A stretch of DNA of 64,000 bases, taken from Octopus bimaculoides (Eukaryota). This document shows, one piece after another, positions 1,390 through 39,170 of this stretch. The stretch lies in NCBI RefSeq assembly GCF_001194135.2, contig NC_068989.1:21833526-21897525 (forward strand), in the 5' to 3' direction. The translations under genes and the position numbers were made by a program. Within the stretch, counting starts at the first letter, position 1; each line of letters begins with the position of its first letter. Under the pieces are notes generated by a model. The model did not search any database. It was given only the letters and a program-made list of their open reading frames with translations, and was not told where the DNA came from.

Positions 1390-1423
<34 letters not shown>

Positions 1424-6900: not shown

Positions 6901-8251
6901 AATATATCTCGTCTTAAAACAAGATGTGAAAAAAATAATTGAAAAACAAATTATTTTCCAGATTCGCTTATTTCCATATGAATAGTGAAAAATTCAGAGT
7001 TCGATAGTAGTGATGGATTTACAAAAAGGTGAAAATTTGGTATTTTGAAGAAAACTATATTTACAGAATGGTAATTTCAGATGTATTACAAACATGACAG
7101 TTTAAAAAAAAATAATGAAAAAGAAAAAAAAAGTAGGGTTGGAGGATTAAAAATGTTAAAAGAAAAATAGCAATTATTTTTCTAGAAAGATATTTAAGAA
7201 ACTCGAATACCAAAGAACGACTATTATGGTTAAACCGAGCACTTTGTTCGGTTTAATAGTAATAGTTATTCTGAACTAATCTGAAACTTGGCTGACTATA
7301 ACAATTTCAAGCTTCCAAGGTTAGGGATTTTCGGAGGTACGTTTCCTTGCAATGTAAAAAAAAAAAAAAGAAGTGCTGAAATAATCATTATTTCGCCACA
7401 TCTTGTATGGGCGAACGAGCAAACTAAATTATATATTTATAACTACTTATGGTCAGCGATTTTGAGGGAAAAGAAAAACTAACACGATGTATGTGGGACT
7501 TGAACGAAAAGACGGTAGATATCAAACTACACAAATGGTCATGTATGTGCCATAAAGGGATAGAGAGATGAGATACAGTAATAGTCATTTTTTTTTCTCC
7601 AAAGGCACGTATAGCGATGTAAGTGAACCTGTACACAAGCGAAAGTGGACAGTAGACATGGGTTAGCTAAAACAGAAATAATAGGCTATGTCGGCAACAG
7701 TTGGTTTCGTTCTAAAATGGTTTATTAAGATTCATTTATGGGGTGCATGCAAAGCAGTCAGGGAATTTCCAGAAAACAACGACGATGCCAATGCTGAAGG
7801 GAAAGGAAACCTTTTAAACGACCAAACAACAAATCTTATATCTTTTCTATCTCGTCCCACCAACTTTTTACGGCAAAATTATAAAAGCAACATTTCACAT
7901 ATCTTCCATAGTAAATACAGAGATAAATACNNNNNNNNNNNNNNNNNNNNNNNNNNNNNNNNNNNNNNNNNNNNNNNNNNNNNNNNNNNNNNNNNNNNNN
8001 NNNNNNNNNNNNNNNNNNNNNNNNNNNNNNNNNNNNNNNNNNNNNNNNNNNCGAGGATACTCGGACAGTGTTTGGTGTGAAATATAAAATGAAAGTCGTG
8101 TGAGAGAGAAAACATGGTAAATGAAAAGCGAAAGGAGAGGGTAAATAGTGCATTTTTATAGACAACACGGTTACATTTAATAGTCTTGAGTGAGTTTATG
8201 TTGGCAGAACTGAATAGGTATAGGCAGAACAAGAAACAACATTAAACATAC

Positions 8252-8308
8252 CTTGTATTTGTCAAAACCGGCAAGAATAGACGGTGTGAGACCGACTATA
8301 TCAGCCAT
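8252..8308 (-). CDS. SELENOI: First coding exon of ethanolaminephosphotransferase 1 (SELENOI/EPT1 family), copy A
   Basis: Minus strand reads caagATGGCTGATATAGTC...GACAAATACAAG|gtatgt = MADIVGLTPSILAGFDKYK plus a phase-0 GT donor. From memory, this matches the human SELENOI N-terminus MAGYEYVSPEQLAGFDKYK (LAGFDKYK identical, same 19-codon length). Downstream exons not found in the window. Confidence 0.85.
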
Positions 8309-8410
8309 CTTGATAGAGCAGACAATATTGTAAATGCGAGCGTTTGATCGGTAATATATGCTCTATTGACCAATCAGAGATGCCGTTGCAAAAGACTGTT
8401 GGGATTTATG
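8309..8410 (-). promoter_or_regulatory. Proximal promoter/5'UTR of SELENOI copy A
   Basis: CCAAT box (tgaCCAATcag, 8370-8374) about 60 bp upstream of the ATG, in a locally CpG-retaining region, conserved in copy B. Confidence 0.6.
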
Positions 8411-8734
8411 CAATGACGGATAGAGAGGCAGTGAATGGGATGGACGATATGAAGACATAGAGGGGGAAGAGAAGGAAGCAGAGAGAGAGATTAAAAAAAG
8501 AGATAGAGAGAAAACGAACGGGAGAATAGAAACAAAGCATGAAAGACAGACAGGGGGGGAGAGAAGTGAAGCAGAGAGACAGAGAGAGAGGGACTACGTA
8601 TATGAAGAAATAGAAGAAAAAGAAATAAAAAGTGTGAGACAGGTATTTAGTCAATGAAACGAGGGAAAGAACGAGATACAGCGGAAGTAAACAAAAACGT
8701 ACAATGAAGGGGTGTGTGTGTTTATACGCGCAAA

Positions 8735-10036
8735 CAATTAGGACCAATATAAAGATCCTCACCAGTTAACGAAAACAAAAAATAAACCCCAGCCTGCTGG
8801 GTGTTAACAACTGTGTAGAAAACGAATATGAAAAAAAAAATTGCACAAACGAACCTAGGGGTGGGGAGATCACAAGATCTTCAGATTCTCCATAGCCGAA
8901 AACATGGGATTCCGTAAAAAAAAAAATAAAAAAAAAATCAATATATATCCATTTTTCTGAAAGTTAGGGAAAAATCGGAGGAGGTTTCTGATTTGGCGGG
9001 CGCCACTTTTTATTTAAAATTTTCTCAATAACACTAAAGGTGCACATTTTATAGGGGGAATCGCATGACCGTGATATGTAGAATACATTATCGAAAGCGA
9101 AAATCGCCAAAATGAAAAAATAAAAAAGTTACAGCGGTTTTCCCAGTGTCTAAACCCAATGTGCATCACACTAAGAGTAAAAGATGTTTTGTATGACACA
9201 TTCTACCAGTGTACCAAGTTTGAAAATGTTTCGATAAGAAACGTTAAGAAAACAAGTAGCGCCCGCCAAATCAGAAAGATCCGCATCTGATTCTGAAAAA
9301 AAATTTGTTTGTAAAAAAAATTCAATTTTTCAACAAACAAAAAAAAAATGTCCCAACCCCCTCCCAATTCTACGGCCTTGGCCTTCGAGCAGGCTACCCA
9401 CATGCTAGAAATAACAGCCAAATCTCACAAAACTGCGATAACATAATGAAAGAAATATGTAATCAATCTACTCACCTTTCTGCAAAAATTTCTTTCAGAG
9501 TAATTTCCCGCAGTAATATGACAAAGTAATTCATGTGAAATTAAAGTGTTTATTTTTTATATTTTTTTGTTTTGTTTTGAAAGTTACAAAAAATATGAGT
9601 ACAGAAATAACAGCAAGCTCTTTTGAAAAAAGAAAAGTAAAAATAGCAAAGAAATACTGTGACAAAGTGAAATTAAAGAGAATCATTTGACCAGCGCAAA
9701 ACATCGTGTGTTTGTGGAACTGAAAATGGCCTTGCTCATTTGAGATTTGGCTGTTATTTCTAGCATGTGGATAGCCTGCTTGAAGGCCAAGGTCGTAGAA
9801 TTGGGAGGGGAGGTTGTTGCGTTTATTTTATTTATTTATTTTTTAATATATATCCATTTTCCTGAAAGTTATGAGGGGGAATTGGGTCTTGTGAATTTTC
9901 CGAAAGTCCTCTCCCCACCCCCAGAGTCGTTTGCGCAAATTGATTTTTTTTTTTTTTTTTTTTTTTTCATATTTGTTTTCTACACAGCAGGTTTTGTTTT
10001 CGTTAACGGATGAGGATCTTTATATTGACCACAATT
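8735..10036. mobile_element. Foldback/MITE-like element with about 145-bp terminal inverted repeats and nested internal inverted repeats
   Basis: 8735-8880 is the gapped reverse complement of 9890-10036 (caatataaagatcctca...gttaacgaaaacaaaa...ggggtggggag). Internal inverted pairs at 9345-9425/9740-9815 and 8985-9005/9258-9280. Confidence 0.65.
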
Positions 10037-11929
10037 AGTGTTCGATAAAACAGATGTGTAACGAAATACTTGACACACCAATAATTTAATGTCCGATTTC
10101 ATTGTAAAAAAAATATTAAATATGCAAATTTTAGTTTACTCAAATCTGTAATATACGTGGGTTGATAAGCAATGCATTGGTGGATAGTTACAGGTGGTAC
10201 ACTGCTGCAGCAGGAAACTCCTAAGAATCGAAACGAATTTACAGCTGTTAGCCTTATCCCAACACCGACTTTTTTTTTCGGTCTGAACAAATATTGTGCA
10301 GACGAATTGTTTATAATCGTCCTAACATTACCAGTTGGCTAAAAAGGAAAAAAATCCATCCTCATCAGCATCATCAAAGAAATTCCAGAAGCCTGGAAAA
10401 TAGTTACATGAAAGATATTGAGAACGATTCCAGCTTATAAAATATATTCCAATAGCTACTATCACTGTAGCAATAATAATTATTATTCCAGTGAGGCATG
10501 AGGTTTTTTTTGGGGGGGGGCGTATAATTTACGAAAAAAAAAGAAAATCTGTTAGAATCATCAAAAGGTTTCATTTCATTTGAAGTTCATGAGAAAAAAA
10601 AATTTCTCAAATGAAAAAAAGTAGCGTGTACGGTTTATATCAATGAGTTTGTATTTCTCACAAAACCTATGGAAGATGGAAAAACAGAAACCAAAAACCA
10701 TTATTTTCTGTAAATCTTTCTGCATTGCATTTTATAGTCATTGAAATTTAAAGTTGTGATTATCTCCCTTGTCATTTTTAACAAGAATTAGTCATTTGGA
10801 AAATTACTATTCTCATCACAATTTTAAAATATCTCACCTTACAACATCAAGTATATTAGCAACAACTAAACTATTAAATCTATTTTACAGTTTCTTCAGC
10901 TACTAGACAAAACAATAGAATTTAAAAACAAGCAATAAAAAGGTGTATGGACATGACAGAATATATAGACTTCACACAATGAGAGTGCATGCGGCAAGGC
11001 AGTTATCATTCCATCTTTATTCAAATGGTATATCGATAGAAACATTATCTAATGGGTTAGCTTTTTTTTTTTTTCATTAAATATGTGAAGAGGGATTTGG
11101 TTGTTGTTTCTAATAGGTTGCACTCTGACATAGTGACTCCTCCACAAGGGTCATTGTGTTTACCATTATGTTCAGCATGAAAATGAGACAGTGAGAGCTG
11201 TGATGGAAATATGTAACACTAGTACAGGGCCTCAATTTTAGTGGGTAGGAGAAGACAATTTAACTGAATCAATATTTGCCTGGTTCTCCCTTTTATTATC
11301 CAGCAGAAAGATGCATATTAGAGGTGACTTCAGCAGAATTCGAATAAAGAAATATATCCAAATAACAAAAGGCATTCTATTCACTTGTCTAAGGATTCTG
11401 TTAATCCAGTTCCTCTTGACGAAAGAAAAATGCCAAAAGAGAAACTGCGAGAAAGAGTAATGCATTGTCTTAAGCAAGAAAAGAACAGAGGCTTCCTTAA
11501 ATATCAAAACTCTTCAAGATATGTGAAGTGTGATGCAAGTTGGAAAGAAAAAAAAAAACCTTAGAAAACAAGAAAAGTCAAAGTTTATAAGGAATGGTTG
11601 ACTGACAGAGCTCCCTTCCCTCGCCAAGAGGAAAAGGTCAGAAGTGGGAGCTGAGAGGTAAAGAATGGCAATTGGATAAAGAGAGTATAGTACAATCCAG
11701 TAAAAGCCAGTTTTAAATGTGTGTGTGCATTTAGTTATAATAAAAACTATTTTACATTAATCTGATGGGTTACTCTATACTTTTGTAAAGTACAAATTTA
11801 TATTCATAAATGAGAATGTTGTTGGCAGTGATTTTGAAGTTTCAACCAGTTAAGCCATGATCAGACTGTGATGTATTAGAGTTAGTCTTATATATTTTTG
11901 CTCCCATTTTTATACATAAATATATACAC

Positions 11930-12610
11930 ACCTATATCAGCCCCACTTTAGCATATATCTCAAACAGAATTGAACAAACAGCAAACAAACTCTACCTCCA
12001 CGAAACAGGAAGGTTAAAATCCCTATATACTAATCAAATTGCTTATAGAACAATGTTAAAGAGAAACATAAACATACAACCTTTACTCAAATATTTTTGT
12101 GAACATAAAGGCACAAAAGAAACAACTTTCAATACTAACGAAGTCATGACATGCCTGATTAATCACCCCAACCTTACAAATGAAAACAAGAAATATCCTA
12201 AATATCAACATGATTAGCCTAAATTTACCACCTACATACTTTTGAAAAATAAGTTGACACACCCAATTCCTAAGGGCTTAAATACTGGACTTTGTACCTT
12301 TGGCCCTTACATTGTCAAAACAAATTATTAAATCCACCAAAATCAATAAAAAATACTGTCATACCTCATGCTTACCTAACAAAAGAGAAACTACATACGT
12401 GTTTACAAAGTTCAACGTGCATTGATAAATTCTAAACAATAACCCCAAATTTAATCAAAATGTTTCCAAAACACCTTTCCATAATAAACCATGAAAACTT
12501 AATTACCACCGCACTCAACATAGACTATATAAAGGCAAAACTAACTCTAATGCATTGCAGTGTGATGATGATTTAGCTGGCCGAAACTTCAGAGTCACTC
12601 TTAACATTCT
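11930..12610 (+). mobile_element. Possible decayed Penelope-like retroelement 3' end
   Basis: A/C-rich degenerate coding-like tract ending in gatgatgatttagctggccgaaac, resembling Penelope-like termini. No intact motif. Confidence 0.3.
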
Positions 12611-13499
12611 TGTTTAAGAATAAGTTTCTGATCTTTGCCTTGAGGAAATGTATAACATAATTACTTCTAAATTGATATTATTGAATTGTAAAAGTAATTT
12701 TACAATGAAATGTTCTCATAAATATAGAACATTTAAATATTTCAATACTAAATAACCCATCAATTATGATTGCTTTTCCTACAAACTGATAGGCATAATT
12801 TTTCTAAAACATTTCTTAGCATATTTAATTGATAGAAAACTAATTGTCATGACATAGGATTTCTATGTTCCTATTCATTCATTACATACTGACGTCATCA
12901 AAAGTTAAATATTAAACTGGATTTTCTTAAAATATTATATTTCTTCTTCACATTTATTTTTGCATGCATTCATTTATTAGAGATATTTTCTAAGTTCACT
13001 TTTAATTTAAAGTATTTTGAATTGCTTTGATAATCTGTGTTTGCATATATTTTCAGATGCATTAATTTGACTGGTATAAAATACCAGTCAAATTAACATA
13101 ACTTTTTCTGTATCTAAATATGTTGACACAATAGAAATGATAGTTGGTAATGTATGGTGCAATCATCAATTAAAGATGTGATTTTCTCCTTTCTTATTTT
13201 TGTTGTCTTATACTCTGAATTTCTTGAAATGATATTTGGATTTACTTTGCCATACATGAAGAATTATCTTGAATGTTTATTCTATTTGCATTTATTGTTA
13301 TCTGATTGTTGGATATAGTTAACCAAATTCATTTAACACCTCATGCTTTATAGATATCTGCCTGGATTTATTAATCCCTTTTACTTCTTGATATCTATAT
13401 GAGAGCTGATCACACGGTAAAGCCACTTGGTACAGATTGACCTTGTATTCTGCTGTGCATGTGCACTAAGTTTTAATGTTCTAGCTCACTTCCACTGTT

Positions 13500-14160
13500 T
13501 ACAACAGTGCTTCAAAGGAACATGTGTAGTGTGTGATCATGACACTGACCATGACAGAGAAAATTGAGCAGAGAATCTGCATCAAATTTTGCCAAAAGTT
13601 TGGCAATACCTGCTCAGAGTCCAATGCAAAGTTTTCAAAAGGTTTTCATCGTTCTCAACACAATCAAGATCTTGTGCAACTGAAACCTCGAGTGTCTTTT
13701 TGGTCAGCTGAAAACAGTTTTGACACATATCTCATACCCAAATCTTCAGTGATAATGGACTGAACTGAACCGTAACTAATCTGCACATCCTCTGATAACT
13801 CACAGCTGCATGCACATTTGCAATGTTTTTCTCAGTTCTGCTGGTTGCAGGTCTCCCAGAACGTTCATCGATATCAACATTTTTTCAGCCATCTACGAAA
13901 CGTCTGAACCACTCGTACACTTGTGTGCAGCTCATACACTTCTCTTCATACACTTTCTGCAACTTTGTGTAGGCCTCTGAGCAGGTACTGCCATGACAAC
14001 TTTCTCTGTCATGTTCAATGCAACAATCACATACTACACACCTTCCTTCCAAGCAGTGTTGTAAGAAGCAGCAGTGAGCTAAAATATCAAAACTTAGTGC
14101 ACATGCACAGCAGAGTTCAAGGTCAATTTGTGCCGAGCAGCTTTACTCTGCATTCTTTAG
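13500..14160 (+). mobile_element. Mariner-derived non-autonomous remnant
   Basis: MTEKIEQRICIKFCQKFGNTCSES (13533 onward) resembles a mariner transposase N-terminus. 13800-14110 is related sequence in the opposite orientation. Confidence 0.65.
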
Positions 14161-14246
14161 CTTCGTTACTATGGCAACAGTCCGGACACTTATTGATCAG
14201 CAAGCGCGCACATGTGTGTGTGTGTGTGTTTGTGTGTGCGTGCGCG

Positions 14247-14282
<36 letters not shown>

Positions 14283-14873
14283 CCCCAGAGGGGATTAACA
14301 CACATTACTGATAGCATATATAATAATACTACAGTTGGATCCAGAGAAAAGATATCTAATGATGGCATGACAGTACTAATGATGGTTCTTTCATATGTAA
14401 TTACATTGCTACAGATCCTGGAAGATATAGTCAATTGTAATATTTAATATATGATTGTTACTTGATCAAACATGAAAAGATGAAAGGCAAAAGGCCATTA
14501 TGTAACTTAGAGGGAGAGGACAGAGTACACAGTACTCAACCAGTAACTTTGTCTTATAAACACAGATGAGATTGAAGCAAAGATCATAAATGGTCATAAC
14601 TAAATTAGCACATGACCAATTTTGCCAATCCACTGCCCTTCCTTCATTCATTTTTACATCAGTTTTTCTGATAGTATGGGTTAGACAAATATGTTGCTGA
14701 GGCATTGTTATACAAATAGATACTCTTCCTGACACTAATTTTCAGTTGGTTTGTATCCCACATGGCTTAAGAAGTACAAAGCAAAGGAACAGTTTATTGA
14801 CAGAGGTACCAACAACAATGCCATCCAATTATGATTTTCATAAAAGAAAGCACAGATATAAAACACAAGCACA

Positions 14874-14926
<53 letters not shown>

Positions 14927-15302
14927 GACTTCTTTTTAATTTCTATCTGCCAAATTCACCCAGGGCTTTGGCTGACCCATGGCTACAGTTGAATATACAT
15001 GCCTCATGTGCCATACAGTTGGACTCAACCTGAAACCGCATGGTTGAGAAATGATACAACCATACCTGTAACTATTCATTTATGTTAACAAAGACAAGAA
15101 CTGAAGATAGACATTACGAAACAACTGAACAATAGTATTATAAATTCAGTGAAGCTTTTTTTTAGCAGGTATACATATACACAAACATACATACTCAGTA
15201 ATAACCTGAAGTCAAAACGCAAAGTTTTGAAACTAAAAGCTACTCCTTACCAGTTTTAAAACTGGTAAGGAATAGCTTTAGGCATCTCACAAGATAACCA
15301 AT

Positions 15303-15519
15303 ATTCTTTTCTACTCTACGCATAAGGCCCGAAATTTTTGGGGAGGGGGGCCAGTCGATTACATCAACCCCAGTATGCAACTGGTACTTAATTTATCAAC
15401 CCCGAAAAGATGAAAGGTAAAGTCAACCTCAGCGGAATTTGAACTCAGAACATAAAAACAGATGAAATACTGCTAAGCATTTCGCCCGGCATGCTAACGC
15501 TTCTGCCAGCTAACCACCT
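15303..15519 (-). mobile_element. SINE family B copy with heavy CpG decay
   Basis: Matches the copies at 48.3-49.3, 52.9-53.5 and 55.0-55.6 kb (core GCCTTTCATCCTTTCGGGGTCGATAAATTAAGTACCAG), but with many CG to CA/TG changes. Confidence 0.85.
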
Positions 15520-15719
15520 TACAAGATAACCAACATTAAAACATTGACTCGAATCAACAGTCAATATAAATAGACAATATTATGCTATTTCCATTATAGT
15601 ATAATATTTTATAGCACACTACAATATTATACTATTTCTATTCAGACAGTAACGTGAATAGTTAAGTTAGTGTTAACATAGTTAATGTAGCTGAAAAGCA
15701 AAAATCCAGTTAAAAGTAC

Positions 15720-16200
15720 AGATATGGGTTGAAAAGTTCATAGAGTGACTCTGAAGGTAGAGCTATGGAATCTTGCATGCATTCATTTCAGCTCTCTTAT
15801 ATATAACTGCATTGCTTCTTTCCAGGTAAACTGACACCTGACTGTTCAAAGAAGGCTTTAAAAGTAACTAGTAGCGACTTGAAAATGGACAAAATATGGC
15901 ATCATAATGTTATCAAAATATGGCATCATAGTGTTATCAAGTACCAGCAGAAAAAGAGTTTGGCCCCCAAGGACATTCATGCTGACATGCTTGCTACATT
16001 AGAGGATGACACGCCATCTTTATCAACAGTGCAAAAGTGGGTAGCTGAATTTAGGAGGTGAAGGCAGAGTTTTACAGATGATCCAAGATCTGGACGACCT
16101 GCAGCTTCCACCACCGAGGAAAACAATGAATGTGTTCACCTCATATTTGATGAAGAAATACAGGAGGCATGGTTCAGTTTTGATAGACTTTCTCAGCAAA
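15720..16200 (+). mobile_element. Mariner transposase 5' remnant (HTH region)
   Basis: MDKIWHHSVIKY...KDIHADMLATLEDDTPSLSTVQKWVAEFRR followed by DDPRSGRP; contains stops and a 25-bp tandem duplication. Confidence 0.75.
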
Positions 16201-16948
16201 GCAGAGAAAGTCTAACAAGTCTTATAATATTGGACATAAGTAATTGTGAAAAATTAGCTGATTTAAGAAAATTATCATTGATGTTAGTCACTGAAGGAGT
16301 AATATGAATAATCCTATTAGGTAGGGTAGATAAGAGTGTAAATCAGGAAGCCTAATCAAGCAATGATCAACCTGAGACACTATGTTCAAGAATGGTGTGA
16401 TCTTTTTTTTATGCAAGTCAGTTTATCGTGACTTTTGAACTCTAAACAATGAACATGATTAAAAAAAAATCTCTAAAGCTTCCCCTTTTGTAAGATATTT
16501 TTGCTCATTAGACTTTTCATTAGTAAGTTATGAATTAGTCAAGTGTATTCAGGAGTACATGAACACACATATGTGGGTGATATACAGACACATATGAGTC
16601 ATTAACGGGTTTTAAAATAATTATATATAACATGTGATGTGCAATCTTTCACAATCATCAAATTTTTTTTTTATTTTTAGATGATTTAAAACTGTTGAAT
16701 GGTGCACAGAAACATCTTCGAAGTTAAATGAACAATATCCAGTTCATAATTTCTTAGTTTTGAAACTACATCACACATTTTACACCGTATATACGTTATA
16801 TCAATTCTCAGTCTGTAACATGAATCAGCTAATTAGGTAAAATTAAATATTTGCACAGTCAGTACCTTGGGAAGTACCCTCTACTGTAGCCCTGGGCCAA
16901 CCAAAGCCTTATGAGTAGATTTAGTAGACAGAAACCTACAGCAGCTCA

Positions 16949-16986
<38 letters not shown>

Positions 16987-20096: not shown

Positions 20097-20316
20097 CCCT
20101 TTAGCATTCAGGTTTCTTTGTCGAGCGTATTGCTTTTTTATTCACATTGTTTTGTACTAACCATGCATCATCTTGTAGCTTCAAGATTTTGATCGTGTGT
20201 TTGTATATTTTTAGAATAACCTTGTAGGGTAGGTGTGCCAGGTTGCATTTAGTCAGTTTTAACATAAAACAGGTAGAATATTTGGGCCAGGTATGGCTGG
20301 ATTAAATGCTAAAGAG
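20097..20316. mobile_element. piggyBac-type MITE (other copies 21959-22127 and fragment about 5826-6005)
   Basis: TTAA|CCCTTTAGCATT...AATGCTAAAGAG|TTAA; three related copies in the window. Confidence 0.7.
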
Positions 20317-28530: not shown

Positions 28531-31500
28531 ATATAATTCTAATTCCTTTAACAATCCAATTGAAAATGGTATCTAGCAAATTGTTAGTCATCAACTTCAC
28601 CTTCTATACTCTTTTACATATGACATTCATAATAAGTATTACATACCAGGATACAGCTACATTCTCAAAAAATACTCAACCAGACTTCCACTGAATCTAC
28701 AGTCACTACACAAAGCATTTACTGAATGCAAGCATAATAATAATCTCAGATTAATTTGCTATGTAGCATCTAATTTACATTCTTAAAATAAAGTCATTAG
28801 AAATTTACAAAGCATTTTATCTAAACTAATTACAGCAATGTGAAATGAAAAACGAGAATTAATGAAATTATGATAGAACTCGTTGGGATTCATCCACAAA
28901 GAATGGATTTATAATTAGTCATAGTTTAGCCTTAAGTCAGACTGGATCCAGCAGATCCATGATCAAAGGTATTCCATCAAGGGGCTACATTATCCAAAAT
29001 GTTCTTCCATGAAGCTTGAAAGGTGTCAGTGAAGATTTGGTTGCAATTTCTAACAAGACAAGCACCTTGGTAGAAGCTCCCTCATTCGCTATTTTCTACA
29101 TTGTTTCTAACGTAGACAAAAGACCTAAAAACTTAAGGCAAAAGGTCAGTCCTTTAAATTGAACCCATTAAATTGAATATTTGACTGGAACTCTATTTTA
29201 TCGATTCCTGATGGATGAAAGGCAAAGTTGACTGTGACAGGATTTGAACTCAAAACGTAAAGATCTACAAAAATTACAGCAAGACATTTTGTCTGATGCC
29301 CTAACATTCTTGCTCTTAATGAACTCTAGCCTCTTATTTTTCATTAGCTTGGCTTCATCAGCAGTTTTTTCTTTTATTAGATTTCGAAAGTTGTAAGTCA
29401 TGACAACAAGAGAAGCTGACACAGGGAGCTTAGATAGGAAATTAGCATTATTGTTACAATAACTATGATTGTTTTTCTGAGTTTTAAATCAAGATAACAT
29501 CAATACAAGAATTGAGCTCATCACATTTTTGAGAGCATTACTTTAAATCTGTGAATTTGCCATTTGCTATGCTTATAGTGTTTGTATGTGAGAGAAGGTT
29601 AGACATATGGTAATATATGGTTGAGAGGAAAGGGGAAATGAGAGAGAGAAGACAGGAGGATAATTCAGTGGTGACAAGAGACATTGACAAGGAGGGAAAA
29701 AGATGAGGATAAAAGAGGGAGAGGGATACGCTCAGAGAATGTGAGAAGGGAAATAAGTAGAAGGAAAGAAGAGAGAGAGATAGCAGAGAAAAGACAGAAA
29801 TGACAGGGTGAAAAAGAGATGAAAATAAAATATGGAAAACAGATAATGGTAGGGAAACAAGGCTGAAAACATCATAGAAAAATGGGAGTGGCAGTGGTAG
29901 GAGTGATAGTCCATTAACCCAAGATTATAGAGTTAAAATTCAACCAATGAAAATTGGTAATACCAGAATATTAGGTGAACTCTAAAAGGTGTTATATTCT
30001 GTCTTTTGGCAAAAACATTTTTGTTCCAAATTAAGAGAAAGTATTTATTTAGTCGGTCAGGAGTTGAAGTTTCAAGCAGATTGACCACACAAGACTTGAT
30101 AGCAGAACAATAGCTCAACAGCAGTATGAAGGTCCAGACTGTATAACTGATGAACAGCCAGCTAGATAGCTATTTTAGGTGCTAATACTACCAAGATCAA
30201 CTTCCAGATCAATAAGAGGAAATATATGCAGCATATTGGAACAGGTGATGAACAACCAGAGTAATTGATGCCATGAGTCATAATGAAACATTTACTCAAT
30301 TACCTCCATGTTAAAAGGAGATACTCATACAATAATATCTACGACAAACCTAAAAGAACTGCAATTTAGCTGTTCAACTTGCTGGAAATAGCAGCTAAAG
30401 CTCCCTAAAAAAAATACACTATCATTCATAAAAGTAGAATACATTGGATAACACTTTTCTAGATATACAAAAAGACAGGACAGTAACAGATGGAATTATC
30501 ATAGATTTATTGACCAGCACTTGGGATAAAATGGCAAGGCATCACTGTCCCTGTTACTTAGCTAACCCCTGCTTAAGCAGATCAAATGGTGTTAAAATGT
30601 TTGCTATTCATATTTATTTGATTCTAACGAAAAGGTGTAACATTATAGATTATTAGGATATTAGGTGTTGAGTGGAGTGAGAATTTCTCTCCCATCACTG
30701 GTACAATGTCCATAAATAAGCACAGCATTTGACTCTCAATGGACTAGTCTATCTGAAAGCAGGACAATTATAGCTCACTACCATTAGCAGCAAGGGCACT
30801 GTATTTATAGAGCTGAATTAACAGTTACCTTTAGATTTAAATAATAGAACAGTCAATCACTGCAGTTTTCTCACTGAAAATACTGTAAATGAAGCAGATA
30901 GAGAATCAGTATGTGTTATATACAAGTTGGTGAATATTTTAAACAATAGATACGATGGGGGGTTCATAAGCAATTAAATACTTTACAAATAGTTATTTCA
31001 TCAACCACTGAGAAAAACTACAATAGTAAAATGTCTCCTGGGGCTAAATTACAGCAACATTCATCCTAAACCAGGACTGCCATGTTATGTTGGCAAAAAT
31101 CTTTACTCCAAAGTACTGTTGCTGAATATCTCTTGTGAGATTTTTAAAAATAGTAATTTTCTAATGTTTACAATATGGTGAAAATAAGTCCATAACTCAT
31201 TTGGTAACAGTGGTCGTACTAAAGTATTCGTTTAAATAAATTGTATCTATAGAAAAATTGGCTTGATGGTTCCCATCTTTCTCCAAGAAGTTAGGGGAAC
31301 ATGTGGTTTAAACCAAACAAGTTAACAAAATACAGCATCTCCACTGCTTACATAGCACTGTATGAACTAATGTTACCTATTTATTAAATAATATGAGTGA
31401 GTGCTGAAAAGCTCCTAGCTTTTAGGGTATCATGAAAAGTATGGTTGGCACCCAGCATTCTAAGTTCTTTTAGAGGGTTTAGGAAAACTGAAGGACCACT

Positions 31501-33469
31501 GTAATAAGTGTGTGAATCTGAAAGGGGAATATGTTGAATAAAATCATAATTAACCGATCCTCCTGTATTTTTTAATACCCAAAGACAGGAACTTTTCATC
31601 ACCTCCTCGTACATAAAGCTTTTGTTCAGTCTAACATACAATATGTCAACACTTTTTTTTCATGAAGCAATTATTCTATAAACTCAGTCAATTATTAAGT
31701 ATCTATAATATGGATTCTCTAGAAAACTAACAATCTTTAATTTGTTTCATTTTGACTGCAGCCATGCTGGAGCACCGCCTTAATTAACTGAAGGGATTTG
31801 TGGCTTGTCTGCCTTCCTACTTATTAAGACTTTGGTTTTTGCTAGGTTGACTATAAGGACCTTCGATTCTAATCCTTGCTTCCACAACTGANNNNNNNNN
31901 NNNNNNNNNNNNNNNNNNNNNNNNNNNNNNNNNNNNNNNNNNNNNNNNNNNNNNNNNNNNNNNNNNNNNNNNNNNNNNNNNNNNNNNNNNNNNNNNNNNN
32001 NNNNNNNNNNNNNNNNNNNNNNNNNNNNNNNNNNNNNNNNNNNNNNNNNNNNNNNNNNNNNNNNNNNNNNNNNNNNNNNNNNNNNNNNNNNNNNNNNNNN
32101 NNNNNNNNNNNNNNNNNNNNNNNNNNNNNNNNNNNNNNNNNNNNNNNCAATGAAAACTAACCATTCCGAAGATTAATCGTAGACGCGTTTCTGGATTATG
32201 AGTGATAAATACTCAATTTCCTTCATCGATACGATATTCCAGTAGTAAATTCGACTATGCTAGCAAACTGTGCATGCATGAACGAGTAACATTCTACATC
32301 GACACAGATCTGAAAGCATAACCGAATCTACCTTGGCCAGCCAGCCCACTATCCTTCCTTCAAGAAATTACCATGTGTGTGACAAGCAATACCGCAGAGA
32401 ATCTGCGTTTACTAACAGGGAGTGAATAATTATTACAAATTAAAAGGGTAAAGGATTATCAATTTATTAATAAATCAACAATTAATAATTTTCACCAAGC
32501 CCTTCGGTATGTAAGCACCATTATCGGTGGAGAACTTATTTAAAAGTTCAAATATTTTTATAAACATAATTAAGGGACCAGCAAATATTTGCTTCACCAC
32601 ACACACATATATATATATATATATAAAAGACAGACTTCTCTCTTTAGTTTCCGTCTATCAAATCTACTCACAAGGCTTTGGTCAGCCGAGGCTATAATAG
32701 AAGGCACTTGCCCAACGTGATATGCAGTGGTACTGAACCTGGGACCATGTGGTTGGGAAGCAAACTTCTTACCACACAGCCACACCTGTTGTTTATGTTT
32801 ATGAATCAATGAATTGCAACCATCACTGCCTGTACAAAGGAGATGTAATTATGTTACAACTATCAAAGAACATCAAAAAAAAAAAAAAAAAAAAAAGACT
32901 GGAGGATGCTTCAGAAGAGATAAACAGAAAAATTAAAATGAGTTAATTAAATCTGATGATTAATGTAATCCAATAAGGTGACAAAAAATAGAATCTGTAA
33001 ACTACCAGGGAAAATTAGTTTTACTGTTTATTCGCATCCTTTTACATTCATCGTCATAATTTAACATCCAGGTTCCTTGCAGGTATAGGCTGGATGGTTA
33101 GGTAGGACCCGGCAAGAGCAAGGACTGCATTGTACTCCAGTATCTTCTTTGGTATCATTTCTATGGTCGGATGCCCTTCCTAATGTCAACCACTATATAG
33201 TGGATACTGTGGTGCTTTTTTTATTACCCAATAGCACCAGTGGGGTTACTGTGTAACTTACAAGACTATAAACCACAAGGCAGGTCCTTATACAAAGAGA
33301 TGAGGGGTTAAAGCTTAAGAGAAGAGGGCAGAGCAGGTTTTTTGTTGTAGAGGAGGGGGGGCTACTCAGATTTAGACAAGAGAGAGACAATAATTAGTTG
33401 GAGCTGCAAAGAGATGAAACCTTCACCAGTAAACTTTTCCTTGCAAGACGTACATAAAATGAGATATAT

Positions 33470-35250
33470 TTGATTATATTCTCCTCTATAATTTGTGGTC
33501 ATGTGCCAATTTCAAAATAGATATTCAAAAATATCCCACTTTTCTGTTTGCTAGAATGATTTTTCCAAAAAAGGAACTGGTAGCTGTATGCTGAAAAAGA
33601 AGATATTGATTGAGTTATTTAGCCCTAGGTAGCCCCGATTCAGTAGATCTCTGATCAATTGTAACTAGACTATCAGTTTTTATGTTTTTATCTATGTATA
33701 GTGTACCAGAGATTACATTAACCAATATGTCCTTTATTTCAGTAGCATGTGGTTTGAGGAACATTCAGCTACTGTTTCTAACAAAATAAGTGACTACATT
33801 GACTTGATTTTGATCAAATAAAAAAGATTTCTATCAGCCCAGTCTAGTAGAAGGGTTCTGTACCCATATCTTTCACTGGCCCCCTAAGACCAGTAATACA
33901 CATTGTTAATATTCCTCTTAAATGGTTGCAAATAGATGACTGCAAATAAAATGTGCAGGAAGGAGTTCTGGGGAGGTAGTTAGAGAGACCTTAATGGGGA
34001 GTGAGGATTTAAATGATACAGATAGTGAAAGAGAGAGAAGCAAATTGAGAGTGCATAAGTGAGACCAGTTGTCCAGCTCTCAAAATCAGAGACCACAGTA
34101 ACATTGGCAAAGGCAGCATGTCAAATAGGCCAGTCAGTCAAATGGCCTTTCTTTGAATGCAGTCTAAGATATCCAGGAGTGTGTGTGTGTGTAGCATCTG
34201 CAGACCTAGTTACAGGAATAGTGCTCCATTTCAAAAGTTGAGCTTTGTAGACGATTAATATCTGAAATATTTTCTGGTGCTGAAGTTTTGTAATGCCGTG
34301 TTTGTTATGTCAAGGATATGTGTTCATCAGAAGAGGTCCTCACTGATGGTGAGATCTAGCATTCATAGCAAATTTGAGGTTTCTAGTTGCATGCTGCTTG
34401 TATTTGGGGTGGTGGGGAATAAATTTTTATCAATGTGTGTAGTGATTTTTATATTTGTATTGTCGAAGGAGATAGGATTGGCAAGACCTCAATGAAAGAT
34501 ATTTATGAATTCTCTGTTTATGAAGCCAGTGCAGGTTTGGTATGGGGGAGTGTATGATGCATGTTGATAATGCTTAAAATTAGGTTAGGGAGAAATGAAA
34601 GGTGCTATCATCAGTGTAAAAGTGGGCATTGTTAGAAGTGACAGAAAATAGATTGCTAGCATATAGGAGAAAATGTGTGAAGGACAAAATTGAACCCTGA
34701 GGTCACATCAAAGTTGACAGAATACAGGCCAGAGAGAGCTCAACATATGCCATAATAGTTGATCTGACAGAGAGTCAGCAACACAAGAGACAGGAGATAG
34801 AACAGTTTTGCTAGCAGATTTGCATGCTAGACAGGTTTAAAAGTTTTAATACTGTTGAAGGTAACAATACTACTTTCCCTAAATTTATTAAGTGTGGAAC
34901 TCTACAGGTAACATATGAGAGTAGGACACTGGAACATTTGATGTTGCAAAAGATATACTGGTGGTCATTAAAAAGGAAATGAGATTCAATGTATTCAATG
35001 TAATGAAGGGAGTTATTCTTAATGGCTGTTACAATCCCCTTTGAAATGTAGGAAGTAAATGTGATAGGACAGTAGTTAGAAGGGTCCAGGATGTTTTCCT
35101 TTTAGGAAATGGGACTCACTGCATCTTGTTTTCAAAAAGATTACTATAACTGGTGAAGATTATGAAGAGCTTAATAATAGATGGAATAACCAAACTAATA
35201 TAATATATTCAAAGCAAATGTAATGTAGTGGTTTTTGCTTCAAATCAGAC
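33470..35250 (+). repeat. Segmental duplication block 1, copy B
   Basis: Colinear match to 1-1900, sharing the same decayed LINE and its flanks. Confidence 0.85.
33850..35150 (-). pseudogene. Decayed LINE reverse transcriptase (jockey/CR1-L2 group)
   Basis: Minus-strand motifs DPSNYCPITFTSYISK, IKTFKPV*HANLLAKL, PQGSILSFTHFLLY and YTDDSTFH, with stops and frameshifts. Partial paralogous copy at 380-588 and 1620-1680. Confidence 0.75.
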
Positions 35251-36984
35251 ACTTGAGCAAGAAAGAAGCAAAAAAAAATGAGGTATAAAAAGCGCCCACA
35301 CATAAAATTTTATATGCAAAAGTGTCGCTAAAGATCTGAAGCTAACAAAAAGGGAAAACAAATGGAGAAATGGTCAGAGACATCAAATATCACCAGTTTC
35401 AAATAAGACTACCCTTTTCCCATGTAAAAATGCAAGTAAATATCAATGTACATGCATAGACACATGTTACCAAATGACCACTGACTTCCAAGTTCATCCA
35501 ATCTTTGACAGGTTTTAAAAATTACTGAATTCCCCAAAGCAGAGTTGGTGGGATTGCTGGTTTAGTCACCAACAACTTGGTCACAAGAAACTTGAAATAT
35601 ACATCAGGTCATTGACATTACATAAGTTAAAAGTAATTAGTAAGTTAATGGTAAGACCTAATATAGATGAAGCACTAGCAAACGAATGCTTCATGTTTGA
35701 ACTAAAAATATTTTTAAGATTGTAACAACAACAAATTTAGATAAGTTACAATACCCAGTGTCATGTTTTATTGTTCTTGATTCAACTTGAATTAAGGTCA
35801 ATAAAATAGGCATCAATGACAGCAAAGACTGAACATGTTATTGATATATATACACTCCCATTGTAGACTAATTTACAAGTATATCAGCTTGAAAACACTG
35901 GTTCTTATCCAATCAGCAAAGTTAAGCAATGCATCACTGCTATGATCAATGCACTTGAATAATCAATTGGGAAACATTAACTGTCTTATATATCTTTAGT
36001 TTTCTAACAACAGTTGAGCTCACCTGGTTAAGAATTCTCAATCAAGACATCCCAAATTTGTTTCTACTTGCCCAAGATGCAGAACATAGCTTCAGGTTGA
36101 ACCCAAGCATTGTGAGTTAAATAGGTGAGACAGAAAATGTTTGGAAGCCTACTGGTTTGACTGTCCCTTATAATTCAATGGACCAGCCTTGTCATACAAA
36201 CACATTGACTCTCCTTGATAATTAGGTTAGAAGTGCATATCATCATCATTGTTTAACACCCATTGTCCATGTTGGTATGGGTTGGACAGTTTAACCAGGG
36301 CTGGTAAGCTGAGGGGCTGCAACAGACTCCAGTCTGATTTGGAATGGTTTCTACAGCTGGATGCTCTTCCTAACGCCAACCACTCCAAGAGAGTAATGGG
36401 TGCTTTTTCATGCCACCGGCACGGGTGCCAGTTGCATGACACCAGTATCTGCCACATCTACGATTTCACTTGGCTTGATGGGTCTTCTTCACAAGCACAG
36501 CATATTGCCAAAGGTCTCCATCATTTGTCATTGCCTCCATGTGTAAGTGGATATTAAGGACAAAAAGGATTTTGACACAAAATTACAAGCTGAATATTTA
36601 AGTGTTTATTTATATCTGTTTATGGCCCTTATCTTAACCTAAAGTTGTAGATAAATGTGAAACTCCTATGAAAAACAGGTTCTCAAATATGAAAATTGTA
36701 ATTAACCACCAACTCTTACCTAAGTTTAACAACAAAAATTTAGGGACTAGATTTTATTAACACAACGAATTATTCTTTTATTCTTTTACTTGTTTCAGTC
36801 ATTTGACTGTGGCCATGCCGGAGCCCCAACTTCAGTTGAACAAATCAACCCCAGGACTTATTCTTTGTAAGCCTAGCGCTTATTCTAACAGCGTGTAAAC
36901 ACACCAACGCCAGTTGTCAAGTGATGGGCAGACAGACAGACAGACACAAAGATACACACACACACACGTGTGTGTGTGTGTGAA

Positions 36985-37300
36985 GGTGCGTAGCTTAGTG
37001 GTTAGGGCTATTCGGCTCACGATTGGAAGGTCGTGCGTTCGATGCCAGGCGACGCGTTGTGTCCTTGGACAAGACACTTAATTTCACGTTGCTCCAGTCC
37101 ACACAGCTGGCAAAAATGAGTAAAATCTGTATTTCAAAGGGCCAGTCTTGTCACACTGTGTCACGCTGAATCTCCCCGAGAACTACGTTATGGGTAAACG
37201 TGTCTGTAGAGTGCTCAGTCACTTACAAGTTAATTTCACGAGCAAACTGTTCCGTTGATCGTATCAGTCGGGACCCTCGTCGTCGTAATGGACGCACTGC
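36985..37300 (+). mobile_element. tRNA-derived SINE sharing the family A 3' half with a different head
   Basis: tRNA-like head (tagcttagtggttaggg...gttcgatgcc) joined to the gccagtcttgtcacactgtgtcacgctgaatctccccgag tail of family A. Confidence 0.7.
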
Positions 37301-37304
37301 TCCT

Positions 37305-37347
<43 letters not shown>

Positions 37348-39056
37348 GACCGCTCTTCTTTCAGTTTCCGTCAACCAAATCCACTCATAAGGATTTGGTC
37401 GGCCCTAGGCTACAGTAGAAGACACTTGACCAGGTTGCCACGCACTGGGACTGAACCTGGAACCATGTGGTTGGATAGCAAGTTTCTTACCACACAGTCA
37501 CATTATATCAGCTTTCCTTTGAGATCGTTAACCTTTCGTTCAATCTTCTCAGGGGAAAGGGACACTGTAAGTGAACCCCTTCTCCGAGCCAAACGTATCA
37601 TGGACAGAGAGAAAAGAATGCCCCCCCCCACCCAATACTTAACAGGTACTTTATCGAACTTGGAAGAATGAAACGCAAGGTGACCTAACCGGGATTTAAA
37701 CTCCAAGCGCAGCGAATGGATATCGTGAGGCAATTCTTGTTGACACTCCTCCAACACCTCGGCCTATCCGCCACCTTATTCATTTTCTCTTGCCATTCAT
37801 AATCATTTTCTCTTCCTTTCGAAGTATTCATTTCAATTATACTGTACCGCTCCGAGAGATCTCTTTCTCGATCGTTGTTTGTGTAGCCTAGGTTCAGTTA
37901 CGATGGAGCAAGCTTAGAGAGATGGTAGGGTGAAATAGGAAGGAAATTTGTCTATCTGTAACAGTTTCAACGACCAGGTTAAGGAATCATTCGTATGTTC
38001 GTTTCCTTGGAATGTAAAAAGGGGCTAAAAGAGTCCAACTAGGTTATGAAATTACCTCTATTTTATTGTAACTTGTATGGTTGAACGAGAGAACTAAATG
38101 GTGCATTATTACAATATGGTTAGCGATTCTGAACATAGGTATCAAACTACAAGAAACAAAGTATATAGCTCGGTGCTCTCTTGCGCCTGACACCCATCTG
38201 ACGGTCAGGTATGTGTTATAAAGGGACAGAGAGATGAGATCTAGAAATAGTCACGTTTTCTTTTTCAAAACAATGCATGTATAGCAATGTAAGTGAATCG
38301 ATACTCAAAGAAGCGAAAGTGGACAGCAGATAAGGGTTAGCTAAAACAGAAATAATAGGCTATGTCGGCAACAGTTGGTTTCGTTCTAAAATGGTTTATT
38401 AAGATTCATTTATGGGGTGCATGCAAAGCAGTCAGGGAATTTCCAGAAAACAACGACGATGCCAATGCTGAAGGGAAAGGAAACCTTTTAAACGACCAAA
38501 CAACAAATCTTATATCTTTTCTATCTCGTCCCACCAACTTTTTACGGCAAAATTATAAAAGCAACATTTCACATATCTTCCATAGTAAATACAGAGATAA
38601 ATACATTCACGAGAAAATAAAGGAAAAATGCTTGGTCGTTANNNNNNNNNNNNNNNNNNNNNNNNNNNNNNNNNNNNNNNNNNNNNNNNNNNNNNNNNNN
38701 NNNNNNNNNNNNNNNNNNNNNNNNNNNNNNNNNNNNNNNNNNNNNNNNNNNNNNNNNNNNNNNNNNNNNNNNNNNNNNNNNNNNNNNNNNNNNNNNNNNN
38801 NNNNNNNNNNNNNNNNNNNNNNNNNNNNNNNNNNNNNNNNNNNNNNNNNNNNNNNNNNNNNNNNNNNNNNNNNNNNNNNNNNNNNNNNNNNNNNNNNNNN
38901 NNNNNNNNNNNNNNNNNNNNNNNNNNNNNNNNNNNNNNNNNNNNNNNNNNNNNNNNNNNNNNNNNNNNNNNNNNNNNNNNNNNNNNNNNNNNNNNNNNNN
39001 NNNNNNNNNNNNNNNNNNNNNNNNNNNNNNNNNNNNNNNNNNNNNNNNNNNNNNNN

Positions 39057-39068
39057 TATATCAGCCAT
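39057..39068 (-). CDS. SELENOI: Start of SELENOI/EPT1 first exon, copy B (MADI..., remainder in gap 38642-39056)
   Basis: 39057-39142 is identical to 8297-8382, including ATGGCTGATATA and the upstream promoter. Intron sequence left of the gap (38334-38604) is identical to 7660-7930. Confidence 0.7.
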
Positions 39069-39170
39069 CTTGATAGAGCAGACAATATTGTAAATGCGAG
39101 CGTTTGATCGGTAATATATGCTCTATTGACCAATCAGAGATGTCGTTGCAAAAGACTGTTGGAATTTATG
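39069..39170 (-). promoter_or_regulatory. Proximal promoter/5'UTR of SELENOI copy B
   Basis: Near-identical to 8309-8410; CCAAT at 39130-39134. Confidence 0.6.

What the first reader, a model, noticed from the sequence alone, without database searches (positions are those of the whole stretch)
7285..39170. SELENOI/EPT1 promoter and first exon duplicated 30.7 kb apart, with no downstream exons found between the copies
Seen: two minus-strand copies of promoter plus exon 1 (ATG at 8308 and 39068). In a by-eye scan of 1-38.6 kb I found no exon 2-like (YSxxDTxPLSxYVMHPFW) or DGKQARRT sequence. Known: LAGFDKYK followed by a phase-0 intron is the EPT1/SELENOI first exon. Inference: copy B may be an alternative first exon/promoter that splices across copy A to shared exons left of the window, or a 5'-only paralogue. 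The CpG-depleted character of 10.4-36.7 kb suggests the interval is transcribed rather than inert.
Basis: partly seen in the sequence, partly recalled or inferred. Interest (0 to 1): 0.7.

Follow-up and report, generated by a model that had tools for sequence, protein, structure and literature searches.

The report
Duplicated EPT1 promoter and first exon
The start of a phospholipid-synthesis gene (core promoter, first exon and the beginning of the first intron) really is present twice about 31 kb apart. The two copies are kept letter-identical over about 0.73 kb, probably by gene conversion, and whether the upstream copy is used remains unproven, so this is an ordinary partial gene duplication.

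Summary
Two minus-strand copies of an EPT1/SELENOI-like core promoter, first exon and intron start lie at about 7283-8499 (A) and 37943-39264 (B).

- **Copy number.** In four resequenced individuals, one 719-742 bp contig covers both copies at about 1.5-2 times single-copy depth. All four flanks sit at about single-copy depth. The duplication is therefore real, not a haplotype artefact.
- **Gaps.** That contig shows the gaps really hold 117 nt (7931-8051) and 325 nt (38642-39056). B therefore has the same ATG, 19 codons and GT donor as A.
- **Identity.** It is 100% across about 733 bp, then drops sharply to about 65-80% in the intron and 40-50% upstream. This looks like a gene-conversion tract inside an older duplication.
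- **RNA.** The donor at 8252 is used and joins an exon that begins YSAVDSSPIG and is not in the window. No other EPT1 exon is in the window.
- **The interval.** It is CpG-depleted (about 0.3) from 11 to 37 kb. Low-depth unspliced RNA was seen in the parts sampled (20-26, 34-36 and 37.7-38.2 kb), and none at 41.6-45.3 kb upstream of B.

This fits B being an upstream alternative promoter whose exon splices over A. RNA strand and origin are unknown, and one library argues against B as the source. Interest is modest.

The parts
8252..8329 (-). Copy A first exon. The start site is near 8329, the ATG is at 8308-8306, and there are 19 codons (MADIVGLTPSILAGFDKYK) ending in phase 0 at 8252. The GT donor is at 8251-8250.
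   Evidence: Sequence. RNA depth rises between about 8345 and 8314, and the high-depth X13 contig ends at 8329. The junction at 8252 is seen in X13, X19 and X27 with the loose end YSAVDSSPIG.
8352..8374 (-). Core promoter motifs of copy A: an inverted CCAAT box (ATTGG, 8374-8370) and a TATA-like TATATTA (8358-8352), about 25-45 nt upstream of the start site. Identical letters are present in copy B at 39112-39134.
   Evidence: Read directly from the sequence. The function of these motifs is inferred from their position relative to the RNA 5' end.
7646..8382 (-). Copy A side of the identical tract, about 733 nt (285 + 117 in the gap + 331). It holds the core promoter, exon 1 and about 600 nt of intron 1.
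   Evidence: Alignment A1 and identity profile. A single 742 bp contig at about twice single-copy depth, with no mismatches.
38320..39142 (-). Copy B side of the identical tract. It includes gap 38642-39056, whose true content is 325 nt. The ATG is at 39068-39066.
   Evidence: A contig of the same length and depth spans 38311-38641, then 325 letters, then 39057-39142 in X2, X8 and X9.
7283..7645 (-). Copy A intron 1 flank, homologous to B 37943-38319 at about 65-80% identity with indels.
37943..38319 (-). Copy B intron-like flank. It is B-specific and present at single-copy depth.
   Evidence: RNA contigs of depth about 2.4-2.5 in X19. Words held at 0.43-0.56 in the P8 runs but 0.00 in X13.
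8383..8499 (-). Copy A proximal upstream region. It is homologous to B 39143-39264, with identity falling from 88% to about 40-50%. Site 8383 (B 39143) distinguishes A from B.
   Evidence: The branch point at 39143 (T/C) is seen in DNA contigs.
39143..39264 (-). Copy B proximal upstream region (B-specific).
   Evidence: One RNA contig of depth 2.9 in X27 covers 39133-39283 exactly.
11001..37000 (.). CpG-depleted interval between the copies (observed/expected about 0.3). Low-depth unspliced RNA covers the parts sampled (20-26 kb and 34.1-36.1 kb).
   Evidence: CpG profile. RNA contigs at 20-26 kb and 34.1-36.1 kb. No EPT1 exons.
7001..11000 (.). CpG-undepleted island around copy A (observed/expected 0.72-0.97). 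It sits inside the depleted domain.
3..1901 (.). Blocks in A's intron 1 that are colinear with B-side blocks. 3-588 matches 33470-34059 (81%), 1596-1681 matches 34476-34566 (76%), and 1711-1901 matches 35074-35260 (68%). They may mark an older and larger duplicated unit.
   Evidence: It was not tested whether these are low-copy transposon copies.

Best explanation
**Origin.** An old duplication, most simply tandem, copied the 5' end of an EPT1/SELENOI-like gene: the proximal promoter, exon 1 and part of the long intron 1. It left two same-strand modules about 30.7 kb apart. Most of the duplicated sequence has drifted to about 65-80% identity. A tract of about 733 bp holding the CCAAT and TATA-like core promoter, the start site, the 19-codon exon 1, the donor and about 600 nt of intron has since been made identical by interlocus gene conversion.

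**Function.**
- Copy A is the demonstrably used first exon.
- Copy B keeps every sequence needed to start transcription and to splice.
- Copy B most likely works as an upstream, weaker or tissue-restricted alternative promoter.
- Its exon 1 would splice across the 30 kb interval and across copy A, which has no acceptor site, to the shared exon 2 left of the window. The mRNA and protein would be indistinguishable from A's.

**Shown versus inferred.**
- Shown: two copies, the identical tract, use of the donor, absence of downstream exons in the window, CpG depletion of the interval, and RNA in the parts of it that were sampled.
- Inferred: gene conversion, the tandem origin, and B's activity.
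For: - **Two real copies.** The core is at about twice the depth of its flanks and of the single-copy baseline in X2, X8 and X1 (about 1.5 times baseline in X9). In X25 its longer piece is about twice its B flanks.
- **Sharp identity edges.** Identity goes from 100% to about 0.7-0.8 at 7645/38320, and to 0.4-0.5 beyond 8426/39186.
- **Intact copy B.** Its gap holds 325 letters. They lie on a contig with the same length and depth as the one that matches A 8052-8382 with 0-1 mismatches.
- **Start site.** It lies near 8329, about 25 nt below the TATA-like box, all inside the tract.
- **Splicing.** The donor at 8252 joins exon 2, which begins YSAVDSSPIG.
- **CpG domain.** CpG observed/expected is about 0.3 from 11 to 37 kb and about 0.85 from 37 to 64 kb. 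The methylation-type domain therefore ends about 2 kb downstream of B's start site. Around A, depletion resumes about 1.3 kb downstream of the start site.
- **Interval RNA in study P8 (X19, X32, X33).**
  - These runs hold 43-56% of B-flank words.
  - X19 has unspliced contigs of depth 2.4-8.3 at 34.1-36.1 kb and 37.7-38.2 kb.
  - All three have unspliced contigs of depth about 2-8 at 20-26 kb.
  - Depth is 0 over 41.6-45.3 kb upstream of B.
- **Precedent.** Duplicated first exons act as alternative start sites in Drosophila hydra (PMC1904467).
Against: - No read or contig can be assigned to B's exon, because the exon, the 5' UTR and 54 nt of promoter are identical to A's.
- Logan contigs carry no strand, and the X24 library looks unstranded (26 against 31 first mates). 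The interval RNA could therefore be plus-strand, for example divergent transcription from A's CpG island.
- In X13 the A intron has depth 55 and holds 100% of its words. B's flank holds 0%.
- In X13 the interval depth falls from 9.4 at 20 kb to 2 at 26 kb, that is towards B. This is the opposite of the 5'-high slope expected for an intron transcribed from B.
- CpG depletion of the interval could have been inherited from the parental intron rather than maintained.
- Order and orientation across gaps 18590-18599 and 31892-32147 were not verified.
- Gene conversion does not require that B is functional.
Confidence: 0.45

Rival explanations
1. Copy B is an inert or nearly inert 5' gene fragment. 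It is a relic of a partial duplication that stays identical to A only because gene conversion keeps overwriting it. On this reading the interval's RNA and CpG depletion come from something else. Candidates are a plus-strand divergent or antisense transcript from A's CpG island, transposon-driven transcription, or depletion inherited from the parental intron.
For: - X13 shows a strong A intron signal (depth 55) but none of the B-flank words.
- The X13 interval depth declines towards B.
- An X13 contig at depth 9.3 runs through A's start site into 8300-8840, so some transcription crosses A's promoter independently of B's flank.
- B sits next to a transposon-rich, high-copy repeat region.
- Only about 54 nt of upstream promoter are conserved perfectly.
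Against: - P8 runs do cover B's own flank and hold nothing over 41.6-45.3 kb upstream of it.
- The CpG-depletion boundary lies within about 2 kb of B.
- B has lost none of its signals: ATG, donor, TATA-like box, CCAAT.
Confidence: 0.35
2. The scaffold arrangement is wrong. Both copies exist, but copy B or one of its flanks is misplaced, misoriented, or swapped with A's flank by short-read scaffolding across a 733 bp repeat. On this reading the figure of 30.7 kb upstream on the same strand is not real.
For: - The core is a collapsed repeat node with two entries and two exits, and the contigs cannot pair the flanks.
- B's upstream part is a 499 bp contig between two gaps.
- Gaps 18590-18599 and 31892-32147 were not tested, and no unique contig was seen to cross gap 39556-40476.
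Against: - The CpG-depleted domain, and the RNA in its sampled parts, reach from A's side to B's left flank.
- Colinear homology blocks between 1-1901 and 33470-35260 lie on the same 6.5 kb contig as B's intron flank.
- In X13, A-left and A-right are both present and B-left is absent (B-right was not seen). This agrees with the assembled pairing.
Confidence: 0.12
3. Copy B drives a different product. This could be a non-coding or chimeric transcript that uses B's exon 1 but ends or splices within the interval, or a truncated 19-residue reading frame. It would not be an EPT1 mRNA.
For: The sampled parts of the interval carry unspliced RNA. B has an intact promoter and donor.
Against: - Every contig that leaves the donor at 8252 continues into the same exon 2 sequence, with agreement 1.0 in X13, X19 and X27.
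- No spliced exon or high-depth unique contig was seen at 20-26 kb or 33.7-38.2 kb.
- There is no convincing coding ORF in the interval.
Confidence: 0.08

Closest known systems
Tandemly duplicated alternative first exons, each with its own promoter. One example is Drosophila hydra with nine exon 1 copies (PMC1904467). The UGT1A and clustered protocadherin variable first exons are further examples, from general knowledge.
   Same: Promoter and first-exon modules are repeated on the same strand upstream of shared downstream exons. A first exon has a donor but no acceptor, so an upstream module can splice over a downstream one.
   Different: Here there are only two modules, and their exons are identical. 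Using B would change regulation but not the protein. In hydra, use of several copies was shown by 5' RACE. Here use of B is not shown and cannot be shown from mature mRNA.
Interlocus (non-allelic) gene conversion between segmental duplicates (general knowledge)
   Same: A sharply bounded tract of complete identity (about 733 bp) sits inside paralogous sequence of about 65-80% identity. The copies are close together, on the same scaffold and in the same orientation.
   Different: Conversion is inferred from the identity profile alone. There are no population or outgroup data to date it or to exclude a young secondary duplication.
Partial (5'-only) gene duplicates or gene fragments created by segmental duplication (general knowledge)
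   Same: Copy B has a promoter and exon 1 but no exon 2 or later exons of its own in the 30 kb downstream.
   Different: B lies upstream of its intact parent and in the same orientation. It can therefore borrow the parent's exons, unlike a dispersed fragment.
EPT1/SELENOI, ethanolaminephosphotransferase 1 of the CDP-alcohol phosphotransferase family
   Same: The N-terminal peptide LAGFDKYKYSAVDSSPIG matches vertebrate fragments with LAGFDKYKYSAVDSNPLS. The exon 1 / exon 2 boundary after KYK is in phase 0. There is a weak match at the same position to the N-terminus of yeast cholinephosphotransferase (E = 0.82).
   Different: Only 29 residues are known here. The catalytic motif and the C-terminus, including any selenocysteine, lie outside the window.

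Membership tests
EPT1/SELENOI (CDP-alcohol phosphotransferase family) | Catalytic motif DG(x)2AR(x)8G(x)3D(x)3D in a multi-pass membrane protein | not testable with these tools
   There is no DGxxAR-type match in any frame of the window. The exons that would carry it lie left of the window, and the species' own protein was not retrieved.
EPT1/SELENOI (CDP-alcohol phosphotransferase family) | EPT1-type N-terminus (...LAGFDKYKYSAVD..P...) split after KYK by a phase-0 intron | tested here: met
   Exon 1 ends ...LAGFDKYK at 8252. RNA continues with YSAVDSSPIG. Vertebrate fragments retrieved carry LAGFDKYKYSAVDSNPLS. tblastn with a human sequence recalled from memory aligned exon 1 only weakly (E = 0.27).
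EPT1/SELENOI (CDP-alcohol phosphotransferase family) | Selenocysteine codon and SECIS element (needed for the name SELENOI) | not testable with these tools
   The 3' end of the gene is not in the window. Rfam found nothing in the window.
Alternative first-exon array | Two or more promoter and first-exon modules on the same strand upstream of shared exons | tested here: met
   Both modules are on the minus strand, with B upstream of A. Both are present at one copy each in several individuals. The order across two gaps was not verified.
Alternative first-exon array | Each module shown to start transcripts that splice to the shared exon | tested here: inconclusive
   This is shown for the pair as a whole, but the exons are identical. 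B-flank RNA is present in P8 runs and absent in X13. Strand is unknown.
Interlocus gene conversion tract | An identical tract with abrupt edges inside diverged paralogous flanks | tested here: met
   The identity profile is 1.00 across the tract, 0.65-0.82 in the intron beyond 7645, and 0.88 then 0.4-0.5 upstream. The single collapsed contig has no A/B bubbles in X2, X8, X9 and X1.
Interlocus gene conversion tract | Phylogenetic or population evidence that the paralogues are more alike within a species than between species | not tested
   No orthologous loci from related species were available.
Assembly artefact (uncollapsed haplotype) | Flanks at half the diploid depth and core at diploid depth | tested here: not met
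   Flanks are at about the single-copy baseline and the core is at about twice that.

The most novel reading that the evidence does not exclude
The two letter-identical promoter and first-exon modules form a working dual-promoter system for a housekeeping phospholipid-synthesis gene. The upstream module B would be the start of a germline-active transcription unit of more than 39 kb, which would explain why the methylation-type CpG depletion begins about 2 kb below B. A would be an internal unmethylated promoter. Recurrent gene conversion would keep both core promoters and exons identical, so that only the distal regulatory inputs differ.
Probability: 0.3. Interest if true: 0.45.

Novelty: new member of a known kind. 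Interest (0 to 1): 0.3.

Why it matters
- **Annotation.** The gene may have two start sites that give the same mRNA. Expression, CAGE or ATAC signal mapped to either copy is ambiguous over about 0.73 kb. The assembly has gaps exactly where the repeat collapses.
- **Evolution.** This is a clean small example of a partial 5' duplication with a sharply bounded gene-conversion tract. It could be used to study how alternative promoters arise by duplication.
- **Limits.** It does not reveal a new kind of system, and the protein made is unchanged whichever copy is used.

Tried and rejected
- **Splice acceptor or spliced leader at 8296.** RNA contigs end there, which suggested an acceptor. Rejected: the contigs simply end at a polymorphic site (8296 C>T, 10 of 31 X24 reads), and coverage tapers to a start site near 8329.
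- **Haplotig or collapsed-copy artefact.** Rejected by depth.
- **Hidden exon 2 or a paralogous gene body in the interval.**
  - tblastn with a human SELENOI sequence recalled from memory found only A's exon 1.
  - The 30 nt exon 2 start, with up to 3 mismatches, gave 0 hits.
  - Six-frame motif scans gave none.
  - Low-stringency tblastn gave noise only.
- **Retrieving the species' own EPT1 protein.** The aim was to fetch the rest of the gene or another assembly. A 41 aa probe, made of the window's 29 residues plus conserved residues, returned only three vertebrate fragments.
- **PDB sequence search with the N-terminus.** There was no hit for the 29 aa. A chimeric 42 aa probe gave a weak hit to yeast cholinephosphotransferase (E = 0.82).
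- **Rfam scan of the window.** Nothing found.
- **Uniform genomic-DNA contamination as the source of interval RNA in P8 runs.** Rejected, because those runs have zero depth over 41.6-45.3 kb.
- **Phasing the 8296 variant to A or B.** Not possible.

Full report
**What is in the sequence**

On the minus strand, copy A reads as follows:
- a CT-rich upstream region;
- an inverted CCAAT box (ATTGG, 8374-8370);
- a TATA-like TATATTA (8358-8352);
- the ATG at 8308;
- 19 codons (MADIVGLTPSILAGFDKYK) ending at 8252;
- a GTATGT donor.

Copy B has the same letters from 39186 down to 39057, with its ATG at 39068. It then runs into gap 38642-39056. Only 12 nt of B's coding sequence are assembled.

Self-BLAST and MAFFT give these homologies:
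- 7283-7930 with 37943-38604;
- 8297-8499 with 39057-39264.

A 40-column identity profile is 1.00 from 8382 down to 7646 (B 39142 to 38320). Beyond that it is 0.65-0.82 down to about 7520 and patchy (0.3-0.75) to 7283. Upstream of 8385 it is 0.88, then 0.4-0.5 beyond 8426.

**Gaps and copy number**

The window has six N-runs. I laid Logan contigs of the resequencing runs on both copies, on their flanks and on a control stretch. The results were as follows.

- One contig (742 bp in X2, X8, X9; 719 bp in X1) crosses gap 7931-8051 with 117 letters. It has no mismatch to A, except one variant at 8097 in X8.
- In X2, X8 and X9 a contig of the same length and depth crosses gap 38642-39056 with 325 letters. 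By register, 245 of those letters are A's 8052-8296. They include the rest of exon 1 and the donor.

| Run | Core depth | A flanks | B flanks | Baseline (long unique contigs, 20-26 kb) |
|---|---|---|---|---|
| X2 | 184 | 102, 116 | 74-87 | 82-105 |
| X9 | 30.7 | 15-19 | 15-19 | about 21 |
| X8 | 200 | 82-95 | 97-120 | about 105 |

In X25 the core was split, but its longer piece (160) was about twice its B flanks (58-84). Each flank is therefore single-copy diploid, and the core is present twice per haploid genome in several animals. This is neither a haplotig nor a collapsed or expanded artefact.

Caveats:
- The core is a repeat node, so contigs cannot pair the left and right flanks.
- Gaps 18590-18599 and 31892-32147 were not tested.
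- No unique contig was seen to cross gap 39556-40476.
- Order and orientation over 30 kb therefore rest on the original scaffolding.

**Gene identity and use of the exon**

- RNA contigs (X13, X19, X27) and raw reads (X24) stop at 8252. They continue with a sequence that translates to YSAVDSSPIG.
- Together with exon 1 this gives LAGFDKYKYSAVDSSPIG. Vertebrate fragments found with a short probe read LAGFDKYKYSAVDSNPLS.
- A chimeric probe aligned weakly to the same N-terminal position of yeast cholinephosphotransferase (E = 0.82).
- RNA coverage tapers between 8314 and 8345, and the high-depth X13 contig ends at 8329. That is about 25 nt below the TATA-like box.
- The start site, 5' UTR, coding exon, donor and 54 nt of core promoter all lie inside the identical tract. 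Mature mRNA, CAGE and 5' RACE therefore cannot tell A from B.
- A variant at 8296 (C>T, Val to Ile) is seen in 10 of 31 X24 reads. It could not be phased.

**No downstream exons**

None of the following found any further EPT1 exon in the 64 kb, on either side of copy A:
- tblastn with a human SELENOI sequence recalled from memory;
- the exon 2 start as a DNA pattern;
- six-frame motif scans;
- a permissive tblastn.

A's intron 1 is therefore longer than 8.2 kb, and B has no exon 2 of its own in the window.

**The interval**

CpG observed/expected per kb:

| Region | CpG observed/expected |
|---|---|
| 1-7 kb (A's intron 1) | 0-0.34 |
| 7-11 kb (island around A) | 0.72-0.97 |
| 11-37 kb | about 0.3 |
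| 37-64 kb | about 0.85 |

- The depleted domain ends about 2 kb downstream of B's predicted start site (about 39089). Around A, depletion resumes about 1.3 kb downstream of the start site.
- The region right of B is rich in transposon remains. These include a DDE_1 fragment at 43.1-43.6 kb and RVT_1 plus integrase remnants at 49.9-51.6 kb.

RNA evidence in and around the interval:
- At 20-26 kb all four RNA runs have unspliced low-depth contigs on unique sequence. Depths are 3-7.6 in X19, 4-8 in X32 and 2-4.4 in X33. X13 falls from 9.4 to 2 going rightwards.
- X19 also covers 34.1-36.1 kb (depth 3.5-8.3) and B's own flank at 37743-38184 (depth about 2.4-2.5).
- P8 runs hold 43-56% of B-flank words and 36-43% of A-intron words.
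- P8 runs have depth 0 across 41.6-45.3 kb upstream of B. Their interval signal is therefore not uniform DNA contamination.
- X13 holds 100% of A-intron words (depth 55) and 0% of B-flank words.

**Interpretation**

The simplest origin is an old duplication of the gene's 5' end.
- Colinear blocks suggest a unit larger than the 1.2 kb visible at first sight, possibly a tandem unit of about 30.7 kb made mostly of intron 1. The blocks are 3-588 / 33470-34059 (81%), 1596-1681 / 34476-34566 and 1711-1901 / 35074-35260.
- Their copy number was not checked, so they may be transposon copies.
- The sharply bounded 733 bp of identity inside paralogous sequence of about 65-80% identity is the signature of interlocus gene conversion.

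On function, B has everything it needs to fire and to splice. It also sits at the right-hand end of both the CpG-depleted domain and, in P8 libraries, the RNA-covered region. This favours B as an upstream alternative promoter whose exon 1 skips A, which has no acceptor, and joins the shared exon 2. Duplicated first exons doing exactly this are known, as in Drosophila hydra (PMC1904467).

Against this reading:
- there is no strand information;
- X13 lacks B-flank RNA, and its interval signal weakens towards B. That suits a plus-strand transcript from A's island, or starts within the interval, better than a B-driven intron;
- CpG depletion may have been inherited from the parental intron.

My probabilities:

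| Explanation | Probability |
|---|---|
| B is a used alternative promoter | about 0.45 |
| B is essentially inert | about 0.35 |
| The scaffold arrangement is wrong | about 0.12 |
| B drives a different product | about 0.08 |

**Verdict**

- This is an ordinary kind of event, a partial 5' gene duplication with gene conversion. It matters mainly for annotation and as a possible example of how an alternative promoter arises.

Noticed in passing
window 39368-39555: Just upstream of copy B, next to gap 39556-40476, lies an inverted repeat. Its arms (CACTAGCTAGTCGTGAGTGGTCGATCC ... GGATCGACCACTCACGACTGGCTGG) enclose telomere-like (CCCTAA)n / (TTAGGG)n runs. DNA k-mer depth there is 10^5-10^6, so it is a very high-copy element, and it may explain the assembly break.
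   Followed up: partly
window 8296: An RNA variant C>T (minus-strand GTC to ATC, Val5Ile in exon 1) is seen in 10 of 31 reads of run X24. It is absent from the DNA contigs of X1, X2, X8 and X9. RNA contigs of X19 and X27 end exactly there, and the reference contig of copy B also ends at the equivalent base (39057). It could be allelic or copy-specific.
   Followed up: partly
window 8300-8840: An X13 RNA contig of depth 9.3 runs from inside exon 1 through the start site into A-specific upstream sequence. Some transcription therefore reads through A's promoter, on an unknown strand. Its depth is similar to the X13 signal at 20-21 kb.
   Followed up: partly
window 39133-39283: One X27 RNA contig (151 nt, depth 2.9, no mismatches) covers B-specific upstream sequence. 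This could be read-through or divergent transcription at B's promoter.
   Followed up: no
window 8749-9300; 36248-37619; 25516-25712; 21379-22166: These are short high-copy repeats. DNA depth was 10^4-10^6 where measured, and RNA depth is from about 10^2 (21379-22166) up to 10^3-10^5 (36248-37619, measured for RNA only). Several contain the recurring ORF motif ...SRRHLPKVP.SGTEP.T.W..., which looks like an abundant SINE-like family.
   Followed up: no
window 43097-43627 (-), 49929-50504 (-) and 51003-51641 (-): These are decayed transposon genes: a DDE_1 transposase fragment (E = 7.8e-18), an RVT_1 reverse transcriptase (E = 7e-15) and a weak integrase zinc-domain hit. The CpG-undepleted 40-64 kb region looks intergenic and transposon-rich.
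   Followed up: partly
window 26731-27111, 46231-46588, 56781-57140: There are three copies, at 91-94% identity, of a repeat of about 360-380 bp. A related piece lies at 37127-37288.
   Followed up: no
window 55520-55940: A trinucleotide-type low-complexity tract gives long poly-Ser, poly-Asp and poly-Ile reading frames in different frames. It overlaps internally repeated sequence at 54986-55860.
   Followed up: no
window 37000 (boundary): CpG observed/expected changes abruptly from about 0.1-0.3 (33-37 kb) to about 0.9 (37-64 kb). GC content also rises from about 0.35 to about 0.41.
   Followed up: partly
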